From: Takakia lepidozioides
Lineage: Eukaryota > Plantae > Bryophyta
NCBI GenBank assembly: GCA_030704615.1
Contig: CM060733.1
Location: 1,860,001-1,924,000, forward strand
Length of the DNA stretch: 64,000 nt
Direction of reading: 5' to 3'
The translations under genes were made by a program, and so were the position numbers. Each line of letters opens with the position of its first letter. Position 1 is the stretch's first letter. The notes beneath the pieces were generated by a model. That model was given only the letters and a program-made list of their open reading frames with translations. It was not told the DNA's origin and did not search any database. Positions 1 to 64,000 of this stretch are shown here, piece by piece.

Positions 1-2815
1 TGGGTGTTTGGATGGGCCCAGGTAACCTGCCTGTCTACCCCAGTGCCCCCTCTGCCTATCTTCCCTATCTTTCTGTAACTCGCCCTCCATAATCTTGTCA
101 GTGGGTCAGTCTTTATTCTGTTAACTACAGATGCGTCCTGGCTATACTGCACCTACTGTAGCCCAGGTAGTTGGATTTCCCTTCGACTCCTGTTTGAAGA
201 TTGGCTAGGACCTACCCTGAGGGTATAGTATAGTCACACCGAGATACTTACCTGTGGAGCCAGTTGTGGGATTTCAATCCAAACTCCAAACTCATGCCAA
301 AATTGCAACAGACCTTGACACAGCCAATGACTATCTAGTGACACAGGGGTCAGTGAGTAGCACAGACATCACAATAGGCAGCATATTGTTGGTTCCTTAC
401 AATGACCCATGTGAGACATGTTTGCACTGCTTTGCCACACCATGGATGGTATTGACAGAAAGAAAGGCATCAATAACGTTCTTCCAAGGCCTAAATGGCC
501 AGAAGAGCTCACAAAGTTGTTGAATTGGTTGATGGGATGGCAGTCGAGGCATACGCTGCCAGCGTGGTATGGGGTCGGCAGCGGTATGCTGGGCTACACA
601 AACAACCAGCCCGAGCGGATAAAAGAGCTGCAGCGCATGTATATAGAGTGGCCCTTCTTCCGCACCTTCCTCTCCAGTGTGCAGGTACTTGCCTCCTTTA
701 ATGGAGGATAAGGCTACCCTAGCATTGTAAGATTTTAGAGGTGCATTGCAAAATGATGGACTTGGGTTTGAAGTAAACCAGCTTAGCTTCAGCACCTAAC
801 ACACCATAACTGGATGAGTTGGGTGACATGAACAGATGTCACTATTCAAAGCATCAATGGAGATCGCTCAAGAATATGCGCGGCTTTGCGGGTACTGTGT
901 CAGATCCCTTTTGGCCTGTATTTAGCTACTCTGAGCTGTGTAGCTGCCGCTCAAATCTCTTTAGCCCTGTAAACTGGGAAGGCATGTAATTGTCATCCAT
1001 TACCTATATTCTTAGAATGACATTGTCTGTAGAAAGAGCAGATGGCAAGGTGGCGTCTTGGTTCTTGTCATCTTCCCCCTCCCGTGTATGGTCATGTTTC
1101 TTAGTTTATATTTTAGGTGTTTACTCTGGTTATAAAAAAAGTTGGGTGCATCATGTCAATGGTTTTCCAATGTTCTGAAAATGTAATGCATTGGCTGGTC
1201 GAGGTTAGAATGTAGCAAACCCTATCTGTCAATGGTCCTCAAAGCTGCATTTTGGCTGCTGTAGATAGTGGTACACCTGCTTTCTCATTTTGCTTGTGCA
1301 CCTTACTCACTGCTTCTACTCTCGTTTCTCCCACTTGGTCAGAAATCGCATAACAGAGAAGCTGGTGTATGATTTGGTGGCTCAAGAGTATTTTTTGACT
1401 AAGGCACAGGTATGTGTTTACCTCCTACTCTACATTCCATGGGCCCTTATGCTTCTACTTTCATTTCTCCCACTTGGGCCGAAATTGCATAACAGAGAAG
1501 CTTGTGTATCTTTGTCTTCTTTTCATGGATGTTTCTGACGACCAGCATGATTGAAACCCTGTTGTCGAAGAGTTTGTCTGTCTGGCGCCGTGTCTGAAGA
1601 CTGAATTTGTGTGTATTTGAACATGGGGATCTCTTTACCTCTTCCTCTCCCGGTGGATGTTATAAAGTTCTTTCTTTCCTCCCCCTTTAGTTGACCGTTG
1701 TGCATGAGCAGTGGTGGGGTAACTTGCATGACCAGCTCTGGGGGATTGGTGTTCCATGGGCACCATGCCTTGATCATTGCCAATGTTCTTTGTACCTGGC
1801 TGTTGCTACATTGGTCACCAGCTCAAACTCTTGCATACCACCAAGATCACCTCAACAGCTTAAAGATATTACTGAGGTGAACCTGGCTTTGGGTACTTGG
1901 TCCAATTGTGGATTGGATGTACAGTTTCTGATGGTGTCTCAACAAAATGCACTGCTGGAAGATAACCCAAGCTTGGAAAGATCCTTTGACACACGGCGCA
2001 AATATTTGGACCCTCTCAATTATCTCCAGGTCTCTGATTTCTGGCCTGGAAGTCACCATAGGATAGAACGATCCTGCACATGCATTATCTTGTACAAAGT
2101 TGAGTGATTTCCACCTGTTCTTGCATTTAGGGCTTTGACATATTTGACATGTGGCAGTCAAATCATGGCGATGAAAGAAATGATTCCATCTGAACTGTAA
2201 TCAGAATCTCTTATATTATGTTATAAGGATGATACCATAGGGGTCTGCGCGAATTCGCAAATGTTTTTCCCTTTTGAGGTCCTTAGGAAAATGTTTTTCC
2301 TCAATATACGTAGACATCATAGAATAGTGTACTGACAACATTTTAGAAATCTGGAAAGAATGCCCTGATTGATTGTTTGGCAGGATTAAGGTATGTACCT
2401 ACACCAGTGTGTGCACTTAGAATAGTGTACTGACAACATTTTAGAAATCTGGAAAGAATTCCCTGATTGATTGTTTAGCAGGATTAAGGTATGTACCTAC
2501 ACCAGTGTGTGCACTTGATAGAAATATAGCAGGTAACTATCTTGTACTTGCTTTCAGAGTAAATGCTAGTTTTGCAGCTTTATTCACTCTCTCAGTTTCA
2601 ACAGAGTTGAGCAAAATTGAGTGGGGTAGAGCAACAAGCTCACCACTGCCAAATTGGAACTTGGACAGTTTTAAACCCTGTGGGGTTACCTGCAGGTAAT
2701 CTTGCTGGGCCGAAGAAGAGATCCCACAGCATCAGAGGCCCAGAAGTCGTTGTGGGAGAAGCCACTGCTGCGAAGCATCAAAGCCATAGCCAGCAACATG
2801 CGCAACACTGGATGA
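1..2815 (+). CDS. PPC: Phosphoenolpyruvate carboxylase, 3' part (5'-truncated by window); bacterial-like sequence with spliceosomal introns
   Basis: Exons 1-21, 544-684, 836-891, 1343-1409, 1925-2029, 2696-2815, all GT-AG and phase-compatible. They splice to WVFGWAQ/SRHTLPAWYGVGSGMLGYTNNQPERIKELQRMYIEWPFFRTFLSSVQ/MSLFKASMEIAQEYARLCG/NRITEKLVYDLVAQEYFLTKAQ/FLMVSQQNALLEDNPSLERSFDTRRKYLDPLNYLQ/VILLGRRRDPTASEAQKSLWEKPLLRSIKAIASNMRNTG*. PEPC motifs WPFF, YxDPLN and C-terminal RNTG are present. Confidence 0.95.
1451..1509 (+). repeat. Degenerate duplicate of the PEPC acceptor plus start of exon 1343-1409
   Basis: gcttctactttcatttctcccacttgggccgaaattgcataacagagaagcttgtgtat matches 1312-1370 (gcttctactctcgtttctcccacttggtcagaaatcgcataacagagaagctggtgtat); acceptor AG is changed to CG. 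Confidence 0.85.
2320..2516. repeat. 98-bp tandem duplication in the last PEPC intron
   Basis: tagaatagtgtactgacaacattttagaaatctgg...acaccagtgtgtgcactt at 2320 and again at 2418, nearly identical. Confidence 0.95.
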
Positions 2816-3899
2816 TCTATGGAAGTGACGTAGAATTTTGTGGTTGCTTTTATCCATTGGAGCAAAAGCAGATTCAGTGTGCCCCAAATTCCAGGAAAAG
2901 TAACAGGAGATACTACATTATCTTGCACTGTCCAGGTAATCAGCACTGTTGGGTTGGGTTGAGTCAATCTCAATGGCCACCAAGAGGACAGGCGGGTCTA
3001 TATCTGTAAAGGAGGATCATCTGTACCAATATGTGTTTGATGACTGAGAGTAATGGGAATGGTACATCGACCCTTTTCACTGTAGTACAGGGGCTTCTCA
3101 GCACTTAGTTTAGGCTCTATGGAGCTCTTCATGACTTCACTGTGATCCTGCGTTCCCCTCGGCCAGGTGTCATCTCAAGAATTGTACATGGTCCGAGCTG
3201 AGCTGATACATGGATATTTTTGGTTTGAAAATTCGAAGTACCAGATCTAGTAGTTGTGAATTGTTAAAGAAATCTTGGATCCACTTCACTTAGATTACTA
3301 TTTAAACTGTTTGGTTCATCCTCTTCACTATCAAAGGATCCACACACAAATACAACTGTGTCTGATGAAACAGAGGAGGTGGATTCAACGTCAGGAGCTA
3401 TGAACTTATTTTGGGCTATTTCGTTTGAGCTGGGTTGGGATCTAACCTGCCATGTAGTTGCTTACAGGAAAGCTCTAGCTTATATGTTATGTATTCTAGA
3501 CACAAACTCGTGTTCAACCAGTTGCTTGGAGTAACTCGTTAGGACTTCAACGCATTTTGGCCCTCATTGGTACTGGGGGGCTTTAGGGCTTGAGGAGGCA
3601 CAGCCAAAGCCAAGCAGTCTATCAAATGAATAAAGGATTTCCAGCAAGTAGACGGATTAGGACGAATCTATGCAGATGCAATGGCGTCCTATGATACAAC
3701 ATGCATCTCATCATTCAACAAGTGATGCCATTCATCCTTACATTGATTTTGTGCCAAGCCTAACTTGTTAACTAATTGTGGCTCAATGTTGTTGTTTCCG
3801 TGGCCAGAGTCTACTCTATCTCAAAGTTGAAATGAGACAGTGGACCAAGCAACCACTAGTGTGAGGTCGAAAAGGCCCTTCCTACGGGAAATGCCTCCA

Positions 3900-32153: not shown

Positions 32154-33708
32154 AGCATCACCGTAAGGTGGGTGTGAAAAGCCCAGTTAGGAAGGGGGCC
32201 GCCGCAAGCGGTGCAGGGGCAGGCGGGCAGGCGGAGAACAAAACGAAAGGGAAGGGTGCGCGCGAGCAGGGTGGGCAGCGCGGCGCTGCCCGGCGGCTGA
32301 ATGGTAACGACCAGCCCCTGCCACCCTTCCCGGGCCCTTCGCTGCTCCCTCACACTCTCCTCTTCCCTCTTCCTCTCCTTCAACTCTCGTGTGTGTCGCT
32401 GGGAGCCATTGACTGTGAGGTCTGTGCAGTAATCGGGGTGGTCCCGAGGCAAACATTACTTCACTTACTGGACATCTGGGCTCTGTTTCACACACACTCA
32501 TCTCTCAAACCTTTTTGCGGTTGGGGAGTCACCCACCTCGCAGACTAACTTAGTGTGGACGTGTCTTGGGCTTGTTAATGTACCTAGATGGGGTGACTGG
32601 TGTGGAGTAGATGGTGTCAGGGAGTGATTAGTTTAAACGTTCTGTCGTGTGCTCTCTTCGGGAGGGTTGGGAACTCTCGTGGGGGAGTGTCTGACCGAGC
32701 TTTGGTTTTGGACAGGGGGGCACGGCCTAGTAGGTAGTAGGTAATGATGGAGAGGAGGGATAGGCAGTCCTTGCTGACAGACCTGGAGCAGGGCAGCAGG
32801 CCAGAGAGTAGCCTTACAGTGGTGCACGTTGGGCCCTTGGATTTTCCATAGATTGCTGGAAGCAGGCCCACCCCAGCGGCCTCCCACCGCCCTTCCAAAC
32901 CGTTAGATTTTCAGAGGCTAGACCGTTTAGAGAGAGACAGATGTAGGCGCCTCTAGGGAGGCTTCACTGTTCATTCATAGTAGGGGCACCCTGGGCAGTC
33001 TGGCGTAAGGAAGAAGAGAGAGAGACATAGACAGGTCAAGGTGCATTGAAAGCTCTTGTTTTGGGAGAGGACCCAGTTTCGCTTGGAAGGGCCAAGGGAG
33101 GAAGTATAGTACAGTGCTCAAGAGAGCGTTAAGTGGTGGTTGATCACTGTGTGTGTATGTAATTTGGGGATAGCAAGGCACGTAGACCTGTGTATCTTCT
33201 AGCGAGGTTGCTGTGTTGTGGGGTTCTGTCTCTCTGTGTCTCTCAGGGTTGGATTATGCAGCCAGACTCTTCCTGCCCAGAAGTATACTTAGTGAGAAGG
33301 GAGGGTATAGAAGCAGTGACACATGTATGTATAATTTCAATTCAGGACCTTGTGTGGTCTCATTTGACTCGGGGTACTGCGTAAGTGAGACAGTGGGGTG
33401 CCTGAGCACTCTGAAGCGAATTGACATGTCCAAAACTATAGACTCGGGGAATGCTTGTAGAGACAGATACAACCTTCATAGCTGACACAAACTTCTTTCT
33501 TCTCCCATCTTATCGCCTGGGTCTCTTTCTCTTCCTCGCATTTTATTAGAAGGTCCGAGGCTGCATCTTTCTATCCTTTGTCCTCTACCACTAGATTCCC
33601 TGGGCAGGAGACTATCTGTTACATTACTCACACTGACATTGAGATCAATCTACGCGCACTAAATACAACTTAGAGAGGGAGAGTGTGTGCGGGGTAACCA
33701 GTATCTGC

Positions 33709-36700
33709 ATGTGCCGCCACTTTACTGAAGGAGGCAAAAGAATGCGGACGTCTTATGACATTCACACTCAAACCCTTTCCTTGAACCAAGCTCCGCCCAA
33801 CCTGGAAAGCATCTACAACTCTCTCAAATTCGACAAGGAAAACCGGCAGAGCAGCTTCCTTCCAGCAAGCTACTCTTCTCTTGAGACAACCACAGACGGC
33901 GAGCGAACGTCAAATAGTGGATCAGACACTCATGCGGGTGAGCCCATTGCTTTCCAGGCGCTTAGTATGTCTACGGGTCAGAGTATGTGGCGCATGCGCT
34001 CCGTTGAAAGCTGTACAGGCTACACAGAGATGAAGCTTTCGAGCGATGAGGAGATGGAACATGCCAGCATGGATGACATGAAGGACTCAACAAACGAGGA
34101 CTTGGAGAATTCTTTGGGCAAAGATATCGACAGTGTGCAATCCAAGCTGTGTCCACGAGGGCACTGGCGGCCTGCTGAGGATGAGAAGCTCCGGGAACTA
34201 GTGTCGCAGTATGGCCCACAGAACTGGAACCTCATTGCTGAGAAACTGCAAGGCCGATCAGGTACTGTTATTCATCAGTCCTATCTGGAATCAGTGGTTT
34301 CAACTTGCTTCAGAGAGGTGTGACTTTCACTGCATATGCATGTTTTGCATGAAGGGCGAGCAGCGGATTTGGAGAACCACAGCCTTTGTAAAGTGGATGA
34401 TGTGAAAGTAAGAAAGAACTTTTACTGTTACAAGCCTGTCTTTCTTGCGTCGTTTAGCTGGTTAACCTCTCTGGACACAAGGTTGGGGGCCACATTCTTC
34501 ATGCGAGTACCCCCAACATCTACTCTATGTATTTCGTTTATCTAGAAGGATCTGAACTCACTGGATTCAGTGAAGGACCTTATCATTCATTAGAGACTAT
34601 CTTAATCGCATCACTGTAATCCACAATATACAGAATACTCAGCTAGTGTCGAGACAGCATCGGGCCTATATTCCAAATCCTGTGTGACCGACCTCCTGTC
34701 GCGTGTCCAGCGAGTCTTTATATTGAACTCATACTCTTATGAAATCATGAAAACGCTCAAGTAGTCTCTAATATTCTCAACAAAATGTTGGACAGATTTG
34801 CCTTACACCTCTTAGGTTCTGCAGGGGTTATGGAGGTTATAATATACTTTATGTACGATCCACAGGCATCTCCCACACTCGGACGTCTTGAAGAAAAATA
34901 GAACATTTCCTTTACAGTCTACAAGTTTACTTGATCAATTTCAATGCTAGATTATAGGTCGCAGATCTCCTCATTCCGCAGAGAAAACACGATTTGGTCA
35001 GTGAAGGATAGAGCCACACATACTCAAATAGGATTCAAACAGATAATGTATACATGTACAGAGATTACCGAAGTTCCTGGGCTGAAGCTTCCATCGAGGA
35101 TGGCCAACCGGTAGGGTACTGTGTGGCCACTGCCAGTAGAACTACGGTAGTGCTTGAGGAGCAATGAGGGAAACATTCAGTTGAGCATGACGGTAGGGTA
35201 TATAATCACCCTTCAATTCGAGTCATCAGGATGTCCAGCTTTTTTCAGCCGCTCAGACTCTGAACTCATGATGACTGCATATCTACACTTGATGTTAGTT
35301 GTGCGGTTGACATCTTCCAGATTTATGCTTGGTGTACATAGTTGCAGTGGGTTAGCTGATGACCACTCTGAAGCATGTTAAGAAGTGTTCAGGACCTATT
35401 ATGATCATTTCAAGAGTGATTAGTGTTTAGAGGAACTTTGTTCAGGATTCGCTTCACCCCATACACCCTCTTTCAAACTTTCTTAGGTTCCTCGAGATTC
35501 TGAGTGCACACGAAGAGTTTGTAGGGATTCCAAGACAAAACATTTAACTGCAAAAACCTCCTTGTGAGGGGTACAAAGCTGGATCGTGTCTGATCGTGGT
35601 GTTGAAACGGGTCTTCGAATGCAGGGAAAAGTTGCAGGCTTAGATGGTTCAATCAACTCGACCCCCGCATCAACCGTCGTCCCTTCACCGAAGAAGAAGA
35701 GGAGCGGCTACTGGCGGCCCACCGATTCCATGGAAACAAGTGGGCTATGATCGCTCGTCTCTTTCCAGGGCGCACAGACAATGCTGTGAAGAATCACTGG
35801 CATGTGGTGATGGCCCGCAAGTTTAGAGAGCGATCACGTGCTTATGGACGTCGCAAGGCTCAGGTATCTCGGAGAGGCAAACGGACGGGCTCAGCAACTG
35901 GCACTCATCACACTGCGGCAGATTCCATCACTGCCTGGATCGAGAAATACTCCCTTGGTGGCGACTCTTTTGAAGCTTGTGCATCTGGACCTACTGTGGG
36001 GAGCCCTTCTGTCAATCATGTGAGCGGGCCTGGCAGTTCTTCTCCCCCAACCTTCCCGGGTAACTTTCCCCGCGCGAGGAGCTTAGGGGCAACACAGCTT
36101 GGAGGCGAATTGGGCCCTAGCGATGTCTCAATTCTCCCCCCTCTCACTAAGATGCCGCGCCTCTCCTTCTGCACGCCAGATTCTAAAGAGGAGCAGCTCG
36201 GTTTCAGCAACTACAGTGACAGCCCTTCTGGGGCACCCTTGCTGTCTTCAAAGTCAGCTGAAGGGCTCATCCCAGGTAGTTGCAGTTTGTCCCAAGTGGG
36301 TTTGTTATTCTGAATGTCTATGAAGTCGAAATTTGGTTCTCTGTCATCCTCACATGTGAGCTACTCAGTACTTTCATTGATCATATTCAGCTCTCAGATT
36401 CAACAAGTGAAGGTTGTGGGTATTTCGGTCCACTGTTTATTAAGTCTCTGGACTGTAACTTACACTTTCTTACCTCCAAGACTGTGTGGCTTCTTTATCA
36501 GGATCCAGGACGTTCATACCAAGCATACCTCCAACGATGCGTGGGGATAAACAACAACCAATACTGACATGTAACATAGACAGCTCCGTGAGCTCAGGGC
36601 TTCTGACCAGAGCTGCAGAAGCTCGTGCAGAGAAAGGCTCATTACGCACTCAACCAGCGACAGACTCCTTCGTCGGTCTGAAGACGCTGCAAGGGGGTCT

Positions 36701-37175
36701 CTATGCAGGCAATCTTGCACCCCACTGGTTTCCATCTCTTCTCAATCCATTTGGTAATGGCCAAGCAACTGGGGCGGAGAAAGAGGAAGGCAGAAGTAGT
36801 AGCAACAGCAATGGTGGTGCTACTTGCCGTTCCGAGTTCCAAAGGCAGAACCAAACTCTACGACCCTCCTTGAGCGATGTGCATGCTCCGTTTAATGGTG
36901 TCTGGCAATTTGAACCACGGGCCAATGGGACGAGCAATAGCCCAAGCAGCTACTTACTGAATGGCATGCAGAGAGACCTTGGATGTCTGACCCCCTCCGC
37001 ACTCTCTGGCCGTGTGCAGCAGCTGCACGAAAGACTTTGCAAGGACACTTCCCTCAAAGTGGGCGCCTCCTCATGGGCTTCGGTCGACCAACTGCAAGAC
37101 ACAAACGAGGGTGTAGCCTCACAGAAGGAGTCAGGAATCCCATTTATCGATTTTCTGGGAGTGGGGGCGGCTTAA
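33709..37175 (+). CDS. R2R3-MYB transcription factor, subgroup 21-like (MYB52/54/105/117 type)
   Basis: Exons 33709-34261, 35625-36275, 36502-37175 (GT-AG, phase 1/1). R2R3 domain [101 protein letters not shown] and C-terminal FIDFLGVG motif. Start ATG uncertain (33709, 33742 or later). Confidence 0.93.
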
Positions 37176-42783: not shown

Positions 42784-45700
42784 TTAACATTCAAGAATCG
42801 CTTCCCCGAATTTGACATGTAGAGCATGGCTTGCCTGCATCAATCCATGTCATTGTGATTAGAAACTGAGAGTGAGTGATGACAGATGTATCTATTGACT
42901 GTTCCTTGTAGCTATCGGTGATGCCCTCAAGTCAGCATCCACATGAGATACTGACACCCTGACACCAGCAATGTGGTGAGCGGGGAGACAGCCAGCTCCC
43001 CTTCAAATGGAAAATCCCTGCATTCCACTGTTGCCACGCCAGAGTTTGCATCCCAAAGTATTGACAACTGAACTTTACTTAGGGAGGGGGTGAGATGTTG
43101 CAGAAACCAGGTAGTACCTTGAAGGCTATAATATGGGCAAGAGGAAGGCCAGGGTGACCAGGAGAAGCACAAAGTGCCAGGTCTCCCATCAAATCAAGCA
43201 GCTTGTGCCTGCATGGCTCATCAGCGAACCGCAGTGGGGGATTTAGCCACCCCTTCTCCTGACTGCCAAAAGGGCAACCACAAGTAGATGGATGAAGTGA
43301 TGATTATTGCCATATGTTATTCCTTGCATGTTAGAGCTTTACTTTTTTGGTCCTATCTCTCACTCTCTCCCTTCACTCTTTGGGCTGGGCACAACAAAGC
43401 CAACCGAATGCAACTTCCTCTAGGAACTGGGCGCAGGATCTATCTTTATAAGGCTTGCAAACCAAGTCTGACAAATACATCTATCTGCCTGTCACATTTG
43501 TCATCTCTGTTTCCACATAGATGGCTGGAGCAAAATGCTGGCATAAACCTCATGCTTTGAATATTTTAATATTCTTGCCAGCACATCCATCAACAAATTT
43601 TCTCCAGGTAGTTGTCAACCACTGTGCATGAGCGGTACAGTAATTTCAGGAGGTGTCTCATTTGCCTGTAATGGGTTTAAATCCATGGGAATTACCCCAC
43701 CTATCCTAGTATCCCAAAAGGGCAATTTATAGCCAAACGTTTGCAGGAAATGGTCAATCAGTAAATCATCTGCTTGTCTCTCCCACACATACATACTGCT
43801 ATGACATAAACATGTCCACTAAGCTATAGACAGACGAGTCCACTATATAATTGGCGTGAGCATCCACAGGTAAACTATATTTACTGTTAGACATGACATT
43901 ATTGATCCAAATGTGCCCAATTGGCATAGAAAGACAAAAATGTTTGGTAAAGAAAAGCAACGAAACAAGAAGGGATGTACCTGCAGACCAGCGCATTGTC
44001 CAAGGATCCACCCTTAATGAGCCCAGCTGCGCGAAGCTGCTCTATCTGCACGCACATTTGCCCCATCCATTCATCCATCCATTCATCTGCACTCATGACT
44101 GCTGCATACATCCACTCACCCACTGTTTTCTTGTGAGCACCCTCGCTTCCTCTCTCTCTGCTTCCAGAGGCCATACTGGATTGCTTGTAACCGGATAGAC
44201 ATCAAGCTGTGCACGACTCCACTGCAAGCTCACAGCACCCCTGATTTCATCTGTAGGTAATAAAAACAAGGCAAAAAGAATATGGCAAGTTCAGGTTGAA
44301 TCTCATACCCTGCTGTCCTGATGCCCCACAACTGGCTCCCAAGAGAGGTTAGCACCCAACGGAGCCTATACCCTCAAGGCTACAGCATTCAACATCTGCA
44401 TCGACATTGCCTATCTCCGCGCAGAGGTACTGTAGACTACACAGGCACCTATGTTCAGCGGTGGTCAACAAATGTGTAAGGTGTAGAGAATCCAACGGTC
44501 CCTCCCTCATTCTTTTTATTGTCAATGGATAAGCATCGATTGGACAGTGTTCTCCCAATCTGAGTAACTAGAATAAAGTTTGTGACAACAGACACTAAAA
44601 GGTGATAAAAGTTTCATGGCCTCTGTCTCCCTGAGGTCGGACATCACATCACATTCATGCTTTCACCTTTATTATGGGCTGACTAAGAACCAAGTTATGT
44701 CTATAAAGTAATATGTTATTTTTTCAACAACAGGAAGGGCTTCCACGTATTCATACATCTTCATACAGCAGATAGTGCTGTTGTATTTCCTCAACCAGGA
44801 GCAACCAAGGGCCAAAGCAGCAAACAGAGGTAGATATGACCTGCTCAAACATGCCAAACGTGCGGGCAGGGGCTACTTCACACTTGTAGGAAGCATCATC
44901 AGTGGGGCTCCAGGTGAACCATTGTCTTCCTATCACTTCTACCTGCATTGATCAGAACCAAACTGTTTAAGGCTCTTCTTTTCCACAGAATTGATGCGAG
45001 TAAGAGTCAAGCAGGAAAGCCCAAAATATGAAGAGCTCCACCTGAGGAAAATCAATGCCATATGTGAGGCGTGTGGTCGAGGATGGGAATGCAGCTACAA
45101 AAGAATCTCCATGGCAGACGGTGACTGGTTTCTCTATCACAAGCACCCTCCTCGACAATTGAGCTCCGGTCTTGTCTGCTGCAATGGTGATGCCTGCTGC
45201 TTCAATGGCCTGGACCCATTCATACGCTGAGCCGTCCAGCAATGGCACCTGTTTGCCCCCACCGATGCACAAAAGCATAACCACAGATATCCAAAATTGA
45301 TAGCTTCTGCACCCCAGAGAGAACTCACAATAGCCAAGGTGGAAGAATTCCATGACACCAAGTCCTGGATAACTACATGCATTGCCACAACATCCTACAA
45401 CCTGTAGAGGTACGATCTGAAATTCCTCCTCAAAACAACCAAGCTACAAAATCTCACCTAAGAATCTCTGGATTAGTTTGTGGTATTGCCAGATGAAGAC
45501 AATCGTTGACTACACAAAACAATAAACTCTCAACCAGAAGGAAAAACAAAACAAAAAGATGGAATCAGAGGACCGACAAATAGAAGGCTTGAGGGTTTAG
45601 TCAACTGACACACCTCATTCCCGCCCTCAATCTCTATGCGACAATTATCAACACCCAGTCCCTCCAAGGCCGATAAGAGGTGCTCCACTGTTCGCACAAC

Positions 45701-46869
45701 AACTTGACCATTGCCTATACATGTACTGAGCCTTGAGTCTCTTACATTCTTCACACATGCAGTAATCCTTGCATCCTCTTGCTCTCCCTTGCTGCCAATA
45801 TTGGCACTTCCATTGTTGTTGCAAACAAAGTACCTTCCTTCTCCTGCAGCTGCTGAAAAGAGTTTCACTGTAGCCCTCTCTCCCGTGTGTAACCCCACTC
45901 CAACACATGTGACTGGCTCTGACAGCGTGTGTTGAGGTCGGCCGGTCTGAATGAATATGAAATTCTTAAGAGTGCAAAAGTAGCACATCCAAGAAGTGTG
46001 GCGTACAAAATTTATTTCTCTCCTGCCAACATACTAAGAGAATGCAGTAGATACTGCTATCCTCGTAGCTGAGGTAGAAGTGTAGGTTTGCCTGCAAATT
46101 TAGATGAAATCACTGCAATTGGCAGAATGAGAACTAGACCTCAAACGTCCTTCATGGATGTGTTCAGGCACGCACATGCTGGTTCTTAATTGGCAACCGC
46201 CAGGGGAGGTCTACTGCATCGTCTTCCAAAGGAATTCGCTGGACTACACTGCCGGCTTTTCACACCGTGAGTTGAGTCCTCGTAACTTCATCTTTGCAGA
46301 TGAAGTTAACCCGGCTGCTGAATGAGGGATCCAAAGAAATGGCCTGATAATAGATGTCGTCCTCCACATAATCTAGGGGAGATTTCCTCCTGTTTCGCGT
46401 ATTTTTAAATTCAAAACCTAATTGTAACACACCAGGTAGAAAGAACCAAAAACTTCTCAGTACAGAACCATACACGTCGTACGCGTTAATAAAGTACATT
46501 CCAACTTAGGCAGCTGTATGCACAAGAGAGGAAGTTCAATCCACACCTCCAAAATACAGTACTCTACACGTGCAATTGAGGCGAGTGAGGCGTCCATACC
46601 TCTATCCGGTTCCCAAGATCAAACCGTTGCTCCACGGCAGGTAATCCACAACTCGCAGCAGTCACACTGGCTTCCCCCTCGCACCTTACTACAGTCAGCC
46701 TTCGTCCACCACCATCGCCAGGAGCCCGCAGAAGATTGATAGACCGAAAAATGCAAGATACTCTTTTCTCGGGGTGACGGAAACTAAGCCTCCCTCTCAT
46801 GGTCGGAAGACCTGGATTCAGATAGACATGATTTGAGCAGAAAAGCAAAGAGTTCATGGAATAGGTCAT
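42784..46869 (-). CDS. LpxC: UDP-3-O-acyl-N-acetylglucosamine deacetylase (lipid A pathway), organelle-targeted
   Basis: Exons 46869-46600, 45946-45614, 45248-45042, 44942-44841, 44045-43981, 43262-43118, 42834-42784, all GT-AG and in phase. Motifs [66 protein letters not shown] and FKASHALH. The first exon and start codon are less certain. Confidence 0.93.
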
Positions 46870-51175: not shown

Positions 51176-53293
51176 ATGGGGGAGAGATGGACTGGTATGC
51201 TGTGGGCATGCGGCTGCGGGACCAAGAGTCATTGCCGGGTGATGGCCTCTCTCTGTTACAGTTCCTCCTCGGGAACCCTTCTGGTGATGCTTCTTCTCTC
51301 TCCACCTTTTCTATGTCTTCTTCCGCTTGTTGGGAGCCGCGTGGTTTTACATGCGTTGTTACGCTGCATCTCTTCTTTTGTTGGTTGCTCTGTGTTTTTG
51401 GTCGGTTAGTTAGCAGCTTTTATTTTGGATGCCTATATGGTTGGAGGGTATGCCCTTCAACCTGAATTCTTTCCAATGCGCACATGCCTACGGCCGTGGG
51501 CTTGCTTCGAAGTTGATTCCAATTTCTTTTCATTCGATTCGATTCGATTCGATTCTAGCGCCTTTTTTATATGTTTGGTGCATATGAAGGCTTGTGGGGG
51601 TAGAAGAGGGAGACGGAGTCCAGGGAATTTGTGTGACTATGTGTGGACATCTCGAGGAACTGATACGGGATCAGTGTGGTTGGGTGGGACGCGGTAGCAA
51701 GCAGGCGCCATCGATCAATGCGATCTTTTTTGTAGGCGACCGCGTGGATGGCACAGCAAACCCGGAGATTGAGCGGCTCTCGCAGCTGGAAACCATCGCA
51801 GCAATTCTGGTGTCCAAATTGGGACCTTCCGTGAATGCCTGGGTGGTCGAGCCATCACATTATAAGGGGTCCTTTGCATGCTACGAGAATCTGTTACCGT
51901 CTCTGACTGCATCTGGGGAGCCTCTAGGTTACAATCCAAAAGGGCTGCCGGCATCCCGGGCCTCCCTCTCTCTTCTCACCAATTGTTTGTCACAGGTATG
52001 GCATTGGCTTACAATTGAAAGAGAAACGGTAAACATTGTGCCCAAATCTGAGGGAAAATCTAGAGTCGCTCTGCCAAATGTATCTTCTTGCGACTGTACA
52101 TTGAACAGCACAGTTTGCATAAGCTAAAAGGGTTTATGGGTTTATCATTATTTTGCTTTTGAGGCACCCGCCCGCCCTTCATTTTCCCCAGCCACAATGT
52201 GGGTAGCATATCATATAAACAAATACAGCATAATGCACTTTTGAAATGTGATGTCTGTTGTGCAAAGAGGTGACAGTTATGTTTCATGTCTTTAATGATC
52301 ATGCAAAGATAAGGACAGAGTTCCAGACAAATGGACGAGACCGTGTGGGCATGGGCAAGCAGCCCATGGACAATGGAGCTTTCTTGGGTGGTGGTGGATA
52401 TACTTCAGCCCTGCCTTGTGATCCCTTCTCTCATGCAAGAAAGTTCCCACGGACAATTGTGCTGGGGTTTAGCAAGGGAGGTGTGGTGCTTAATCAGCTG
52501 CTCGCAGAGATTGTGCACTTTGAGGACTCTCTGGAAGAAGGGAATTGTAAATCAATGGAGAAGAGACAAGACCTTGTGGACAATGGCTTGGTAAGATTCC
52601 AAGATACTATTTCTGGCCAAGCTTTTTCCATCAATGTTGAACATTTTTGTTTTCTATTTCAGTGACGAGTCTCAAGAACTAGTATGTGACTTTTTCAGAC
52701 CTTATTTAACATTGTCCAGCTCCTGAGGGGCCTAATAACAATTTTCTTACAGGTGGCACCTGTTTGAAATCCGTGAAGGAGTGGAAGAAATTCAGCAGAA
52801 GAATTAAACTGGGTTTGTGTATGGTGTTGATCTCTGAGGTCTTTTTTATTGAAACTCAAATTGGGCTATGCAGGGAGCTCTAAGGGAGACTGAAGGTGCC
52901 AAACCCAGGATGAAGGAAATGGGGGATTTGATTATTCCCCTGACAGTGGAAGAATTTTTGAGGAGTGTAGAGGAGGTGCATTTTGTGGATGTTGGATTGA
53001 ACTGTCGGGGTGCCTACCAGACTGACCCATATGTGCTAGAAGGACTGGGGAGGGCGTCCAGAATGAGAGATGCTGGCCTCCTTCTTTCATTCCATGGAAC
53101 TCCACGTCAGTGGCAAGACCGTATCCGCCGTTGGGTCGCTCAAGAGAAGGACCGCTGTGTTGCTCTGCTGCGAGATGCAGCCCGCAAGCAGGGGGATGGC
53201 AAGTTGAGGGTTTCTGAAACTTTCTACTTCGGGGAAAGACGTGCTAGCCTGCAAATGCATTTTGAGATTATTGAGGCCCTCGTTCTCAGCTGA
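51176..53293 (+). CDS. UPF0565 / C2orf69-like protein (alpha/beta-hydrolase-like)
   Basis: Exons 51176-51283, 51705-51995, 52309-52590, 52874-53293 (all phase 0). Motifs NAIFFVGDRV, NAWVVE, LGFSKGGVVLNQL, VHFVDVGLN, HGTPRQW and LQMHFEII. Confidence 0.88.
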
Positions 53294-58900: not shown

Positions 58901-61900
58901 TGTTGTTTACGCTTTTCTTGGAAGATACTTTTACTTGTACACCAATAGGTTTGCAGCATATGGACAATGTTATCTCCTAGACATTTTGGTTTCTCAATCT
59001 CATAGCTGATTGATGGTTTGGCAGCTGTCCAAAGAATCTTGAAGACTTTCACTTTGCACTCATGTATGACAGGTCTTTGTTAACCCGTATGGAGGAAAAG
59101 GCGCTGCATGCCAAACTTGGGAACTCGTTACACCACTGTTTGATCGTGCTAGAATAAAAACAAAGGTGCAAGCATCAAGTCATCTTTGCACCATTGCAGT
59201 TCTTGTCTCATCCATGCCAGAGTGTCTTATTCTCTTGTTCATTTTGCCAACATAGCATGATCTTTGAGAAATTGCCTCAGTGTTGTCTTGCAACTCAATT
59301 GATACTTTGGGTAATTGTAAAGGTTTCCTTTGGTTGGTTCTCTTCTCCCTCCTTGCCATTAGTTCGAAGGGAACCCAATTATTCCCACTTGGGCTACTGA
59401 AGGGCTTCTAGCCCTGCTCCTCACGTTTGCATGTCTGTGCTTTTGCGCTCCACATTGAGAGCCAGTCCGTTGTTACTTGGGACACCTCATCCCCAGGATA
59501 GTAAAGATCACACTCCTGTATCTTTTCTCGTCTTATTTTCCTATCCCTGGCTCTACTTGCCAAAGACAATTCCATACATCAGCCCTGTGGATCGTGCATA
59601 GAGCAGCATACTCTGTTGGAACCTTCTTTCTTTCACTGAAGTCTTCCACTATGAGGATCAGAAATGCTTGGCAGCTTACCTGCACGAGGCCTTCACCCTT
59701 AGACAATCCCTTGAGCAGTAGTTGCTTTTGGGCTGTTTTTTGGCACAGATTTTGTTTCCTCTCTGTTGTTTTTCCCATTTTGTCCCATAAGCTCTTTGAG
59801 CTTTCCGCGGACTTTATGAAGCACCATTTCATTTCTTTTCTTTTCTTTTTGTTCATTATTTTGTCCCTTATGCTCTTTGAACTTCCCATAGATGTTACAA
59901 AGCTTCTTTCCATCTACTTTTAGACATCTTTTCCCTGTTGAAACAGCTTATACCATTCATTTGAGTTTCTAGACCTTTTTTTTTGGTATCATGTGCTCTC
60001 CTTGAACTAGGAAGCAGAACTTCAGAGAGCATGACTCTTGGAGCACCTTTTAAAGCATCATATGAAAGGATGCCATTCTTACTGATGTTTCTTCTCACAC
60101 TTCTTTCCCTATCCTCCCATTGCCTTGAACTAAAGCTCAACCCCCAGAATGTCATTGAGATCCTTAGCAATGACTTTTGCAGGACCAAAGTCATTCTTGT
60201 TGCATTGTATATCGTACAGCATGCATGATTCTGAAGATTTCTCTGTTGATTCATTCCCAGGTGATAAAGACAGAAAGGGCAGGGCATGCATATGACATCA
60301 TGAATGAGGCTACTATAGAAGAGCTCAACTCACAAGATGGGGTGGTGATTGTGGTGCGGAAATCTTGGCCATTATTCTAAGATGTTTTCGATGCTAAATG
60401 ACAGGCATTTATAAAACCTTGAATCATGACATTTCCCTTATTCCCTATCATGTGTATGCACATTCACAAGTGTAAGGTAAAACTTCTTCATGTTTCTCAA
60501 CACAAAAACTTTGGTGCAGGGTGGAGATGGTCTTTTCAATGAAGTGTTGAACGGCTTAGTAAGGCACCGCCATAGAGCCCAGCCAGCTACCATGCCCCAT
60601 GGGGTGACCAATTTTCTGACAGACGGAACAGGATACCAAGATGAGATGCAAAAGCATCAACTTAATTTGGAAATAGATCAAGGAGTTTTAGGGGGCCACA
60701 GCACTGGGAAGTCACCAGCCCAAGAAGGTGGTTTGAAACAAATGGCTTGTGTGGGTGCCAACTCAGACTCAGATTTTGATCGCTCTTCCTGCTGTCCAGA
60801 TCATCACCCTCTTCTCCAAGAAGTTCCCTTTCATTCTCTTTCCAAAGTGGCACATGCTGGCAACCTTCAAGGAGCTAGTGCCACAATGATTTCTTCAGCT
60901 GTTGGGAGGGAAGGCGAACCTGCCGGCCTGGCCTCTGGTGATACCCCTGGTTATGATTCCATCTCTGTCACTGTGCCTGTCTGGAACCAGCAAGGGGATT
61001 TCCTGTCTTCTACATCAGCAGAGCCAGAACCTATTATAGGTGAGAAGAGATAAGGCATGCACTCCCAATCACAGCCTACACATTTGTATGCCAAGTCCAT
61101 GGAATGCATACTAAGACTTGACAGCAGTAGATTTCAGCTGAGAAGCTATTGCTGCAAAATATCGGTTTTGCCATGGCATACCTAGTTATATTCCATGTCA
61201 TATAACTTCACCTTGTGTACAAAGTTTTCTGTGGACTTCCTGAGCTCCTTGGACTTTGGCTGGTAGTCACAAAAGTGAAAACTCTTGTGAGGAGATTTCT
61301 CTTTGGTCCTAAAGTTACCACTAAATGACAGGTGCACACCCAGTGTCTGTCGATGGCCTAGACATGCAGGACATTGACTTGCCAACTGCAAATTTAGTTC
61401 ACTCCCATCCAAAAGTTCGGCTTGGTATTATCCCTGCTGGATCAACCGACACTGTTGCTATCAGGTATCCTGCATCACAAATTCCTTTCTTCTTTCATCA
61501 AATCTTGTTTTTGTAGTCTGTCCAGTTTCATCTCCTCCCCCAGCCTTTCCCACCCAGCCTACTGGTCATTCTCGTTGTCTTAGCTGTATAGGAGGTGGAT
61601 GTTGTTCTCTGTGTTTGAGGCATAGAGCACTTGAATGTGAAGATGCAGCAAAATTGTTGTTCCATTCAAACTTGGTTAGTGTTCCCAAAGCTTCAGTTTA
61701 TAAGAGGTTCATTTTGTGTGCCCTGTCCCTTTCTGACTGAGCACAGTTTGGAGGCTAAGGTGTCCAGGATGATTTTGGCCCTTTGAGTGTTTTCCTTGTG
61801 TGTCACAGTATATCTGTATTTAGACATTTGCAGAGATTTTTAGCCACATGCATTTGTTCATATGGTGTGTAAACAGCACAACAGGAGTACGCGACCCTGT

Positions 61901-64000
61901 TACATCGGCATTGCATATAATACTGGGAGACAGCATGCCTCTTGACATTGTGCGCATCACCAGCTGGAAAAGAAAAGCCTTGCCTGACGAAAAGCCCCAA
62001 GTTCGCTATGCTGCCTCATTTGCAGGGTGGGTGCCCAACTTAAACCTTAAAATAATTTCTGCTAAAGCAGATGTAGGATTGATTTCACCCTTTGGTCTTT
62101 TGAAAGTTTAATACAGCTGAAATTCCTTGAGAAATCCCCAGGAAATGCCACATTAAAATAAAAGCTATCTTTGCAGTATACAAATGAATATTTTTGGTAG
62201 GTGCTCTTGTACTAGGCTTTCATGACCTTATGATGACAGTTGTCATGGGCACTTCTTTGTGCGACAAATGAAAATATGGCTCGTTCTTGCTTGAAGGTTT
62301 GAGAGATCGAATTATATTCTCCCTATGTTTGACAGGTATGGTTTCTATGGAGATGTGATGAAGGAGAGTGAAACTTTGCGATGGATGGGTCCTGCTCGCT
62401 ATGATGTTGCAGGATTTAAGGTTTTCATGAGACACAAGTATGTCTTCTCCTCACCTTTCCCCCCAACGATGATGGCAGCCTACCTGCATGAGGCACCTCA
62501 TCTTGGGGTGTCGTTTGATGTGTTTTGAAGTGGTTTCTTCTTGTTCTACTTCATCCCATGGGAGGTTATTAAAAAACTTCCTACTTTTTTCTCTCTCTTG
62601 CTCTTGGGGCACAAGATGCATGGTCATTATCTTGAGAAAACCTTCAGATTAAGCTATACTGGTACATGCCCTGCACACTGTATTGCAGGAAGTATGAGGC
62701 AGAGATATCATTTTTGGAGATTCCTCATATTTCGTCAATCCCCACAATGCCACATGGCCCTTGGACCCACGCCCCATCATTCAGCTGCAGCAAACCCATG
62801 GATCGGGAGAACAAGAAGGTTTGTTTCCATCATGTGTGCAGTACAGGATGGAGTGCTTTACAGATTCATTTGTGTAGGTTGCCCATACTAACTGCAAGAA
62901 AGGGGGAAGAAGGCAGTTGGAGAGATGGATCTGTTTCCACCATAGCTTTGAGCCAAGACAGTGAACCCAGTTGTTACTATTAGTGTGAGAGACAAACAGA
63001 ACTAGCATATGTTTGGTTCCATCCCCAAATATCGTGAGCAATATATGATCAGGCTCATGAAGCTTTTGCAGGTAAGTGGCAGGAGAGCATCCATAGAATC
63101 ATCTTTCCATGCTTTGGAACATGTATGTTTGTCGGTTTACATCACCCATGTTTCCGAGAAAACTACGTGTTTTTGACATGGATGTTGAAGATTTGATTTT
63201 TTGTAGCTTGAACGTGACATTTATTGTGAAAGTCGAGGTTCATGTTATTGTACATTGCATACTGTGCACAGGTTGTGTGCCGCGTCAACTGTGCAATCTG
63301 TGCAAAGGGGTTTGATTTTTCACATCTTGTGAACAATGAGAGTGAATCCGAGGGTAGCCCAACCAATGACCAAACAGTGGAGAGGCCCCAGGCCCCCAGA
63401 TGGCGAACTTGTCGAACACATTTCCATAGCATCGGGGCCGCCATCATGTCTTGTCGAAATGAAAAAGCACCAGATGGCGTTGCTGCCCACGCCCACCTGG
63501 CCGACGGTCTACTTCATTTGATTCTTATTCGAGAGTGTTCCCGCCCTGCCTATCTCAGGTCTGTATCTTCAGGGTATCTGTTTGTTGTGACTAGACCAAG
63601 TTATCCACATCTATTCAGGCAGAGGATTGTGGTTGCATATACACAGCAACCTACTGCACATGATATCCTGCCATCATTGCCCCTTTTAACTTTACAAAGT
63701 GAATGGATTGACTATCCAGTTGAATAACTGCATACCTGGTTGTGGCCCAGATCGGACAGAAAGAATTTACTCATAAGACGTTGTTTGCCGTAGCCTTGTG
63801 GCCATTGACCCCGCGCCCAGTTTGAGCGGAAACAAAAGGGACAGAACCTACCTCTGTCAGGGGCTGACATTGGTAGTAAGACTTACCTTCATATATAGAA
63901 TTAATCCGGGTTTTCCAGATATCCTCTAGAAATCCCTTCACACAAGCATCAATCTGCTGTGTGTGATTTGCCCAAAAACTAGGCCTCAGGAGGGCCTGGG
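55984..64000 (+). CDS. CERK: Ceramide kinase (ACD5-like), 3'-truncated by window
   Basis: Exons 55984-56223, 56948-57106, 58599-58766, 59073-59165, 60261-60353, 60520-61039, 61332-61464, 61877-62026, 62336-62437, 62689-62818, 63272-63558. Motifs VFVNPYGGKG, TERAGHA, GGDGLFNEVLNG, GIIPAGSTD, GYGFYGDV, RWMGPARY and the CERK-type CxxxCxxC (CRVNCAIC). Confidence 0.92.
57265..58320 (+). mobile_element. 5'-truncated non-LTR retrotransposon (RTEX-like) in a CERK intron
   Basis: Fragments LESIQVGVLKECMSACSKTANVAVRGEFGIPSL...RWWGQL and RLKFKLRAGSLPL...CPLCGQPEDIIHFLIHCP (C-terminal CCHC knuckle); ends in duplicated gagtacattc-(CT)n tails. Confidence 0.7.

What the first reader, a model, noticed from the sequence alone, without database searches (positions are those of the whole stretch)
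1..2815. Intron-bearing PEP carboxylase of proteobacterial type: candidate horizontally acquired third PEPC class in a plant
Seen: six in-frame exons with GT-AG introns encode an intact PEPC C-terminus ending MRNTG*. Knowledge (from memory of the families): plant-type PEPC reads WTQTRFHLPVWLG...YITTLN...QNTG, and plant 'bacterial-type' PEPC reads WTQTRFVLPAWLG...YLNPxN...(R/K)NTG. This protein instead has FGWAQSRHTLPAWYG, QMSLFKAxMxIAxEY, YLDPLN and WxxPLLRSIxAIA, a signature I associate with beta/gamma-proteobacterial PEPCs. Inference: a bacterial ppc gene was transferred into this plant lineage, gained introns and is still maintained. It could give an extra HCO3- fixation or anaplerotic route outside the usual plant PEPC regulation. 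The introns and the contiguity with plant genes argue against contamination. A divergent PEPC clade in seed-free plants may already be reported, so novelty needs checking.
Basis: partly seen in the sequence, partly recalled or inferred. Interest (0 to 1): 0.88.

Follow-up and report, generated by a model that had tools for sequence, protein, structure and literature searches.

The report
Third, ancient plant PEP carboxylase class
This is the working 3' end of an overlooked third kind of plant carbon-fixing enzyme (PEP carboxylase) that green algae took from a bacterium long before land plants arose; mosses, liverworts and clubmosses still keep it, and it carries a sensor domain that may tie it to nitrogen supply in the chloroplast.

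Summary
Observation confirmed: six in-frame exons (1-2815), five GT-AG introns, all spliced in contigs from two studies, encode an intact PEPC C-terminus. It is neither plant-type nor plant 'bacterial-type' PEPC (31-38% identity; AU tests reject both and a cyanobacterial origin) and falls among gammaproteobacterial-type Ppc (about 50%). But it is not a transfer into this lineage. Orthologues (53-88%) occur in mosses, liverworts, Diphasiastrum, Zygnematophyceae, Chlorokybus, Mesostigma and prasinophytes and form one fully supported clade; all five intron positions match Physcomitrium and Marchantia. The transfer therefore dates to about the green-plant ancestor, followed by vertical descent and apparent loss in ferns and seed plants. 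Orthologues add a transit-peptide-like leader and a GlnD/ACR-type ACT domain, as in the glutamine-activated Chlamydomonas amylase AMA2. Best reading: a plastid, amino-acid-regulated anaplerotic PEPC (location and ligand inferred, untested). The likely Physcomitrium orthologue was filed as a lone 'BTPC IV'; I found no paper describing the clade, but could not read Deng et al. 2016. This scan noted only this same locus before (s1-461962, s1-459936), not other DNA. Interest 0.68.

The parts
1..21 (+). end of a coding exon that begins before the window (conserved loop after the RAIP motif)
   Evidence: bridged to the next exon in X2 record 5
544..684 (+). coding exon, 47 aa, PEPcase model 756-802
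836..891 (+). coding exon; carries the lysine equivalent to E. coli K773 (aspartate/malate site); ends in phase 2
1343..1409 (+). coding exon
1925..2029 (+). coding exon, PEPcase model 845-878; carries the arginine equivalent to E. coli R832
2696..2815 (+). last coding exon ending RNTG-stop (N equivalent to E. coli N881)
2816..3400 (+). 3' untranslated region (at least this far)
   Evidence: contigs X1 record 4 and X2 record 5 continue unbroken past 3400
22..2695 (+). five GT-AG introns (22-543, 685-835, 892-1342, 1410-1924, 2030-2695), each at the same codon and phase as in Physcomitrium and Marchantia

Best explanation
The locus is the 3' end of an expressed nuclear gene of a third green-plant PEPC clade. 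Shown: a gammaproteobacterial-type ppc gene, unrelated within the family to PTPC, BTPC or cyanobacterial Ppc, was present in the ancestor of Chlorophyta and Streptophyta (or spread very early among them), gained an N-terminal leader and a GlnD/ACR-type ACT domain and about 30 introns, and was inherited vertically to mosses, liverworts and Lycopodiaceae; all catalytic and aspartate/malate-site residues are kept. Inferred: it came by horizontal transfer from a gammaproteobacterium or close relative (about 0.8); the Ser/Thr/Arg-rich, acid-poor, disordered leader imports it into the plastid (about 0.7); there it carboxylates PEP with bicarbonate to oxaloacetate to supply carbon skeletons for ammonium assimilation, is inhibited by aspartate/malate, and is tuned by glutamine or another amino acid binding the ACT domain in place of the phosphorylation switch of PTPC (about 0.45). 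It was apparently lost in ferns, seed plants, Selaginella and core chlorophytes.
For: Splicing and integrity. Orthologues 76-88% in land plants and Zygnematophyceae, 53-70% in other green algae, versus 47-54% gammaproteobacteria, 36-38% BTPC, 31-33% PTPC over the same 169 columns. One clade at SH-aLRT 100 under LG+G4 and LG+C20, its inner order broadly following green-plant phylogeny, inside a 45-row branch (100) whose named members are Thiohalorhabdus, Chromatiales, Thiotrichales, Methylococcales, Sulfuricellaceae. AU rejects union with BTPC, PTPC, both, or the cyanobacterial sequence (p at most 0.0004). Named orthologues. Five of five intron positions shared with Physcomitrium and Marchantia, each with 30 coding introns; pN 0.09-0.12 with synonymous sites saturated (pS 0.85). 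Sphagnum fallax holds PTPC, BTPC and this type. [quoted passage not shown] That topology and the conserved D/N..L and F positions match the glutamine-sensing ACT of Chlamydomonas AMA2, where the leucine is needed for glutamine response (PMC11190351); L172 and F203 are invariant in 20 orthologues. Leader composition.
Against: The leader and ACT domain were tested on orthologues only; in this genome they lie outside the window and rest on an unchecked scan note (s1-459936). No targeting predictor, localisation or enzyme data. A few leaders (Riccia model) are acid-rich. A tree with the sampled Gammaproteobacteria monophyletic and the green clade outside is not rejected (AU p 0.12), so the donor is not pinned; the root is only midpoint. 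One cyanobacterial sequence was sampled. Absence from ferns and seed plants is absence from a database search. One marine member (P0197/P0409) shows no ACT in the called ORF.
Confidence: 0.75

Rival explanations
1. Recent horizontal transfer of a proteobacterial ppc into this plant's own lineage, followed by intron gain.
For: Nearest non-plant proteins are gammaproteobacterial.
Against: Orthologues across mosses, liverworts, a lycophyte and green algae are far closer (53-88%) than any bacterium, form one clade and share all five introns.
Confidence: 0.01
2. A divergent plant BTPC, as the literature files the Physcomitrium gene ('BTPC IV').
For: Ends in RNTG, orthologues lack the N-terminal phosphorylation motif and pass the PRK00009 cut-off; PMC8435749 classed Pp3c12_10250 as BTPC IV.
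Against: 36-38% identity to BTPC; BTPC groups with PTPC and E. coli Ppc (100), far from this clade; AU p 6e-59; no 137-residue BTPC insertion; 31 coding exons against 18-21; Ceratodon and Sphagnum carry a canonical BTPC as well.
Confidence: 0.02
3. The gene came with an organelle (endosymbiotic transfer from the plastid or mitochondrial ancestor, which may itself have acquired it) rather than by an independent transfer to early green algae.
For: Ancient, probably plastid-targeted; donor not pinned (AU p 0.12).
Against: Union with the cyanobacterial sequence P0041 (neighbours CpeT and KaiB-like kinase) is rejected; alphaproteobacterial Ppc (Azospirillum, Sphingobium) falls in another clade; no red-algal, glaucophyte or other eukaryote member appears before the bacteria in a profile search.
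Confidence: 0.1
4. Same origin, but the enzyme serves another role: a cytosolic or mitochondrial enzyme, or part of an algal/bryophyte CO2-concentrating or C4-like route, with the ACT domain acting as a dimerisation or protein-binding module rather than a glutamine sensor.
For: ACT domains also mediate oligomerisation; in land plants the GlnD-type DRPGLL loop has drifted to DQxNLL-like; leaders of plastid and mitochondrial proteins look alike.
Against: Residues needed for glutamine response in AMA2 are invariant; other ACT fusions of this type in green algae are plastid enzymes (PMC11190351); rice uses a plastid PEPC for ammonium assimilation (cited in PMC4085970).
Confidence: 0.3

Closest known systems
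Gammaproteobacterial-type Ppc (Sulfurivermis, Chromatiales, Thiotrichales, Methylococcales, Thioalkalivibrio)
   Same: Nearest non-green relatives, 47-49% over the catalytic domain and about 50-56% over the window part; same C-terminal motifs and RNTG end.
   Different: About 930 aa, no leader, no ACT domain listed in any bacterial hit, no introns.
Plant bacterial-type PEPC (BTPC; AtPPC4 class)
   Same: RNTG end, no N-terminal phosphorylation motif, passes PRK00009.
   Different: Separate clade with E. coli Ppc and PTPC; 36-38% identity; BTPC has a ~140-residue insertion, an acidic cytosolic N-terminus and 18-21 exons; no leader or ACT.
Plant-type PEPC (PTPC), including the plastid isoform rice Osppc4
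   Same: Same reaction, fold and catalytic residues; Osppc4 is a functional analogue for plastid anaplerosis (PMC4085970).
   Different: 31% identity; QNTG end; regulated by N-terminal serine phosphorylation; Osppc4 is, from my own knowledge, a recently retargeted PTPC without ACT.
'BTPC IV', Physcomitrella Pp3c12_10250 (PMC8435749)
   Same: Very probably the Physcomitrium orthologue: sole member of its group among 135 PEPCs, 32 exons, chromosome 12; the orthologue here has 31 coding exons on record CM009327.2, which I take from memory to be chromosome 12.
   Different: The paper files it as BTPC and, in the passages found, says nothing of ACT, leader, origin or wider distribution.
Chlamydomonas AMA2 alpha-amylase (ACT-enzyme fusion), GlnD and plant ACR proteins
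   Same: Leader + GlnD/ACR-type ACT (same topology, same key residues) + catalytic domain; AMA2 is glutamine-activated through it (PMC11190351).
   Different: Different enzyme; ligand and sign of regulation untested for PEPC.

Membership tests
PEPC (PF00311) | PEPcase domain match and TIM-barrel PEPC fold | tested here: met
   three exons hit PF00311 in order; orthologue model matches solved PEPCs, TM by target 0.85-0.90
PEPC (PF00311) | catalytic and effector residues (E. coli H138, R396, E506, D543, K546, H579, R581, R587, R699, R713, K773, R832, N881) | tested here: met
   K773, R832, N881 in the window; the rest in orthologues
PEPC (PF00311) | PEP carboxylation activity | not testable with these tools
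   needs an assay
Plant-type PEPC (PTPC) | C-terminal QNTG | tested here: not met
   ends RNTG
Plant-type PEPC (PTPC) | N-terminal phosphorylation motif | tested here: not met
   absent in 15 orthologues, present in Sphagnum PTPC; this genome's N-terminus is outside the window
Plant-type PEPC (PTPC) | clade membership | tested here: not met
   AU p 0.0002; 31% identity
Plant bacterial-type PEPC (BTPC) | (R/K)NTG end and PRK00009 match | tested here: met
   not diagnostic, since PTPC and bacterial Ppc also pass PRK00009
Plant bacterial-type PEPC (BTPC) | ~140-residue disordered insertion | tested here: not met
   137-residue BTPC insertion absent from the Physcomitrium orthologue
Plant bacterial-type PEPC (BTPC) | 18-21 exon gene structure | tested here: not met
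   31 coding exons in two orthologues against 18-21 (PMC8435749)
Plant bacterial-type PEPC (BTPC) | clade membership | tested here: not met
   AU p 6e-59; separate 100-supported branches
Plant bacterial-type PEPC (BTPC) | binds PTPC to form Class-2 hetero-octamer | not testable with these tools
   needs co-purification
Gammaproteobacterial-type Ppc clade | falls in the branch with Chromatiales, Thiotrichales, Methylococcales Ppc | tested here: met
   45-row branch at SH-aLRT 100
Gammaproteobacterial-type Ppc clade | nested within named Gammaproteobacteria (identifies donor) | tested here: inconclusive
   best trees nest it above Thiohalorhabdus, but the alternative is not rejected, AU p 0.12
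Cyanobacterial Ppc (endosymbiotic origin) | sister to cyanobacterial PEPC | tested here: not met
   AU p 2e-45 with one cyanobacterial-like sequence
GlnD/ACR-type ACT fusion enzymes | [quoted passage not shown] | tested here: met
   orthologues only
GlnD/ACR-type ACT fusion enzymes | glutamine or amino-acid control of activity | not testable with these tools
   inferred from AMA2 (PMC11190351)
Plastid-targeted proteins | cleavable N-terminal transit peptide | tested here: inconclusive
   100-150 aa unconserved, disordered, Ser/Thr/Arg-rich, acid-poor leaders in most orthologues; no predictor or localisation available
Lineage-specific horizontal transfer | absent from related plants, nearest relatives bacterial | tested here: not met

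The most novel reading that the evidence does not exclude
Green plants have an undescribed third PEPC class, acquired from a gammaproteobacterium by the green-plant ancestor, imported into the plastid and switched by glutamine through a GlnD-type ACT domain: a direct carbon-nitrogen coupling at the anaplerotic step that bryophytes and clubmosses keep and crops have lost, and that has been hidden under the label 'bacterial-type PEPC'.
Probability: 0.4. Interest if true: 0.85.

Novelty: new variant of a known kind. Interest (0 to 1): 0.68.

Why it matters
Plant PEPC is described as two clades, PTPC and BTPC (PMC8784020; bioRxiv 2021.06.09.447806). A third clade of separate bacterial origin, about as old as green plants, changes that picture and means counts of 'BTPC' in seed-free plants based on RNTG or PRK00009 mix two unrelated enzymes. 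No ACT-PEPC fusion turned up in the papers searched. If plastid-located and glutamine-regulated, it is a built-in carbon-nitrogen sensor at a central metabolic step, testable at once in Physcomitrium and Marchantia, and a candidate tool for plastid anaplerosis in crops. It also raises a cheap check: whether the 'bacterial-type' PEPC reported in Isoetes CAM is canonical BTPC or this class.

Tried and rejected
Contamination: rejected by spliced contigs, shared introns and plant neighbours. Pseudogene: no stops or frameshifts, expressed, pN about 0.1 with saturated pS (dN/dS cannot be given as a number). Recent transfer, divergent BTPC/PTPC and cyanobacterial origin: rejected. A search with the ACT region alone returned only the query among 282 candidates, uninformative. 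ESM Atlas features for the ACT gave only sub-0.9 ACR/ACT leads. treekit's careful tree and built-in AU tests did not finish; I used the quick LG+C20 tree and my own fast LG+G4 constrained trees on 41 rows, so supports are SH-aLRT only. In one search three rows (L139, L160, L178) were wrong-strand ORFs; fixed. Paper searches for ACT-PEPC, Pp3c12_10250, PPC-3, Takakia and a third clade found no description; Deng et al. 2016, which from memory names three subfamilies PPC-1/2/3, is not held, so overlap with its PPC-3 is unchecked. The Physcomitrella N-terminome supplements held do not list the gene. The joined translation was built only inside scripts from the window file, for local comparison with already fetched proteins and for trees.

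Full report
1. Observation. They give 169 codons and a TGA stop with no break; the five introns are GT-AG, phases 0,0,2,0,0. Searched one by one, exons 2, 5 and 6 match Pfam PEPcase in the right order. Two public runs from two studies, labelled RNA by guess, hold the stretch. Their contigs skip introns 2-5 exactly, X2 record 5 also joins exon 1 to exon 2, there are no differing letters, and they continue 1.5-1.8 kb upstream and through a 3' UTR past 3400. Neighbouring genes are intron-split eukaryotic genes. The gene is real, nuclear and expressed.

2. What it is. Exon 2 searched against 1.84 billion representatives gave a 1,180-aa protein at 81%, a Ceratodon purpureus gene. With it as query the best hits are Physcomitrium, a second Ceratodon copy, Sphagnum, Diphasiastrum, Calypogeia, Riccia, Marchantia, Spirogloea, Mesotaenium, Chlorokybus, Mesostigma and marine prasinophyte transcripts including Pterosperma, followed by Gammaproteobacteria at 45-49%. 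A profile of 12 members returned the same 22 clusters and then dropped from 1,322 to 1,219 bits into bacteria; no fern, seed plant, Selaginella, core chlorophyte or red alga appeared. A genome scan named the bacterial relatives as Chromatiales, Ectothiorhodospiraceae, Thiotrichales, Methylococcales and Sulfuricellaceae. True PTPC and BTPC were fetched from metagenome transcripts by motif and named through their clusters (Sphagnum PTPC; Ceratodon, Sphagnum and Picea BTPC). Over the window's 169 columns identity is 81-88% to land-plant orthologues, 53-76% to algal ones, 47-54% to the gammaproteobacteria, 36-38% to BTPC, 31-33% to PTPC and E. coli.

3. Phylogeny and gene structure. Trees of 118 rows (LG+G4) and 67 rows (LG+C20) put the window with all green orthologues in one clade (SH-aLRT 100), with prasinophytes basal, then Mesostigma and Chlorokybus, Zygnematophyceae, then land plants. 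This clade lies inside a branch of gammaproteobacterial-type Ppc (100), while PTPC, BTPC and E. coli Ppc form a distant branch (100). AU tests on 41 rows reject joining it to BTPC, PTPC, both, or a cyanobacterial-like sequence (p at most 0.0004), but do not reject a tree with the sampled Gammaproteobacteria monophyletic and the green clade beside them (p 0.12). So a bacterial, gamma-type source is supported and the exact donor is open; the root is midpoint only. The Physcomitrium and Marchantia genes each have 30 coding introns at matching places, and the last five match the window in codon and phase; against them pN is 0.09-0.12 and synonymous sites are saturated. Sphagnum fallax encodes PTPC, BTPC and this type.

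4. Anatomy outside the window. Orthologues have 100-150 unconserved residues, rich in Ser, Thr, Arg and Ala and poor in acids, unlike the acidic starts of PTPC and BTPC, then an ACT domain conserved from prasinophytes to Diphasiastrum whose best family match is the second ACT of GlnD, the bacterial glutamine sensor. AlphaFold on the 20-row alignment gives disorder for 1-145, a four-strand two-helix domain at 148-238 and a PEPC body. No bacterial hit lists an ACT, so the fusion looks green-plant-made. An earlier scan note (s1-459936) reports an ACT fused to a PEPC N-terminus 11 kb upstream of this window; I could not read that DNA, but it fits. All catalytic residues are kept in orthologues, and the three aspartate/malate-site residues that fall in the window are kept there.

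5. How it most likely works. Shown: an intact, expressed, strongly conserved PEPC with catalytic and inhibitor sites. Inferred: the leader imports it into the plastid (about 0.7); it makes oxaloacetate from PEP and bicarbonate to feed ammonium assimilation, as the unrelated plastid PTPC Osppc4 does in rice (cited in PMC4085970); and the ACT domain reads glutamine or another amino acid (about 0.45 for the whole chain). The precedent is Chlamydomonas AMA2, an amylase with a putative chloroplast leader, activated by glutamine through an N-terminal ACT of the same topology, where a conserved leucine is needed for the response and a phenylalanine 31 residues on modulates it (PMC11190351); the orthologues here have an invariant leucine and an invariant phenylalanine 31 residues apart in the same motif. 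Rivals: another compartment or a CO2-concentrating role with a structural ACT (0.3); origin through an organelle (0.1); divergent BTPC (0.02); recent transfer (0.01).

6. What is known. Papers held describe two plant clades. One family survey placed Physcomitrella Pp3c12_10250 alone in 'BTPC IV' with 32 exons, and no Selaginella, seed-plant or core-chlorophyte gene with it (PMC8435749); this is very probably the orthologue, seen as an outlier but not recognised. An algal survey argues a non-cyanobacterial origin of eukaryotic PEPCs in general and classes by the C-terminal tetrapeptide (PMC4196954), which lumps this class with BTPC. Ten paper searches found no ACT-PEPC or third-clade description. 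Deng et al. 2016 (three subfamilies, from memory) could not be read, and most subscription papers are not held, so prior recognition of the clade is possible.

7. Limits and handling. The window gives only the last 14% of the protein; leader and ACT claims rest on orthologues. Losses rest on database absence. 

8. Verdict. Real feature; new variant of a known enzyme family: an ancient, bacterium-derived, leader- and ACT-bearing third PEPC clade of green plants, not a lineage-specific transfer. Interest 0.68; 0.85 if plastid location and glutamine control hold and the clade is undescribed (probability about 0.4).

Noticed in passing
window 1311-1370 and 1450-1509: A 60-nt, 90%-identical copy of the intron 3 acceptor and start of exon 4 sits inside intron 4; the copy has lost the acceptor AG and is not used in the spliced contigs.
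   Followed up: partly
window 2320-2515: Tandem duplication of 98 nt (98% identical) in the last intron; a low-depth contig of run X1 lacks one copy, either an allele without it or assembly collapse.
   Followed up: partly
window introns 1, 2, 4, 5 (22-2695): Acceptors lack a polypyrimidine tract (37-50% pyrimidine, 30-37% G in the last 30 nt) while donor-side sequence is pyrimidine-rich in several; yet they are spliced accurately. Agrees with scan note s1-461963.
   Followed up: partly
window 1-2815: The protein groups as sister to Sphagnum plus Funariales/Dicranidae mosses (SH-aLRT 87-89, 169 columns only); with about 5,000 windows for the genome this suggests an early-branching moss. Weak and unconfirmed.
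   Followed up: partly
window 33643-37172: Intron-split R2R3-Myb gene.
   Followed up: no
window 44970-46033 (minus strand): LpxC (lipid A pathway deacetylase) exons, a bacterial-type gene known in plants.
   Followed up: no
window 51588-53290 and 60481-63724: C2orf69-like exons and ceramide-kinase-like exons.
   Followed up: no
L204:716-3736 and L215:611-3739: Tara Oceans member of the green clade (68% GC, long unbroken ORF) with no ACT in the called ORF or detectable on the contig: possible loss or pre-fusion state.
   Followed up: partly
L216, L217, L218: Three more intron-rich eukaryotic members from metagenomes, closest to streptophytes; L216 and L218 share the first window intron, L217 lacks the first two but shares the last ones.
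   Followed up: partly
literature: bioRxiv 2021.06.09.447806; PMC8784020 Table 1: Isoetes CAM uses a highly expressed 'bacterial-type' PEPC and I. sinensis has five 'BTPC' by PRK00009; since this third class also passes PRK00009, those genes should be re-classified.
   Followed up: no
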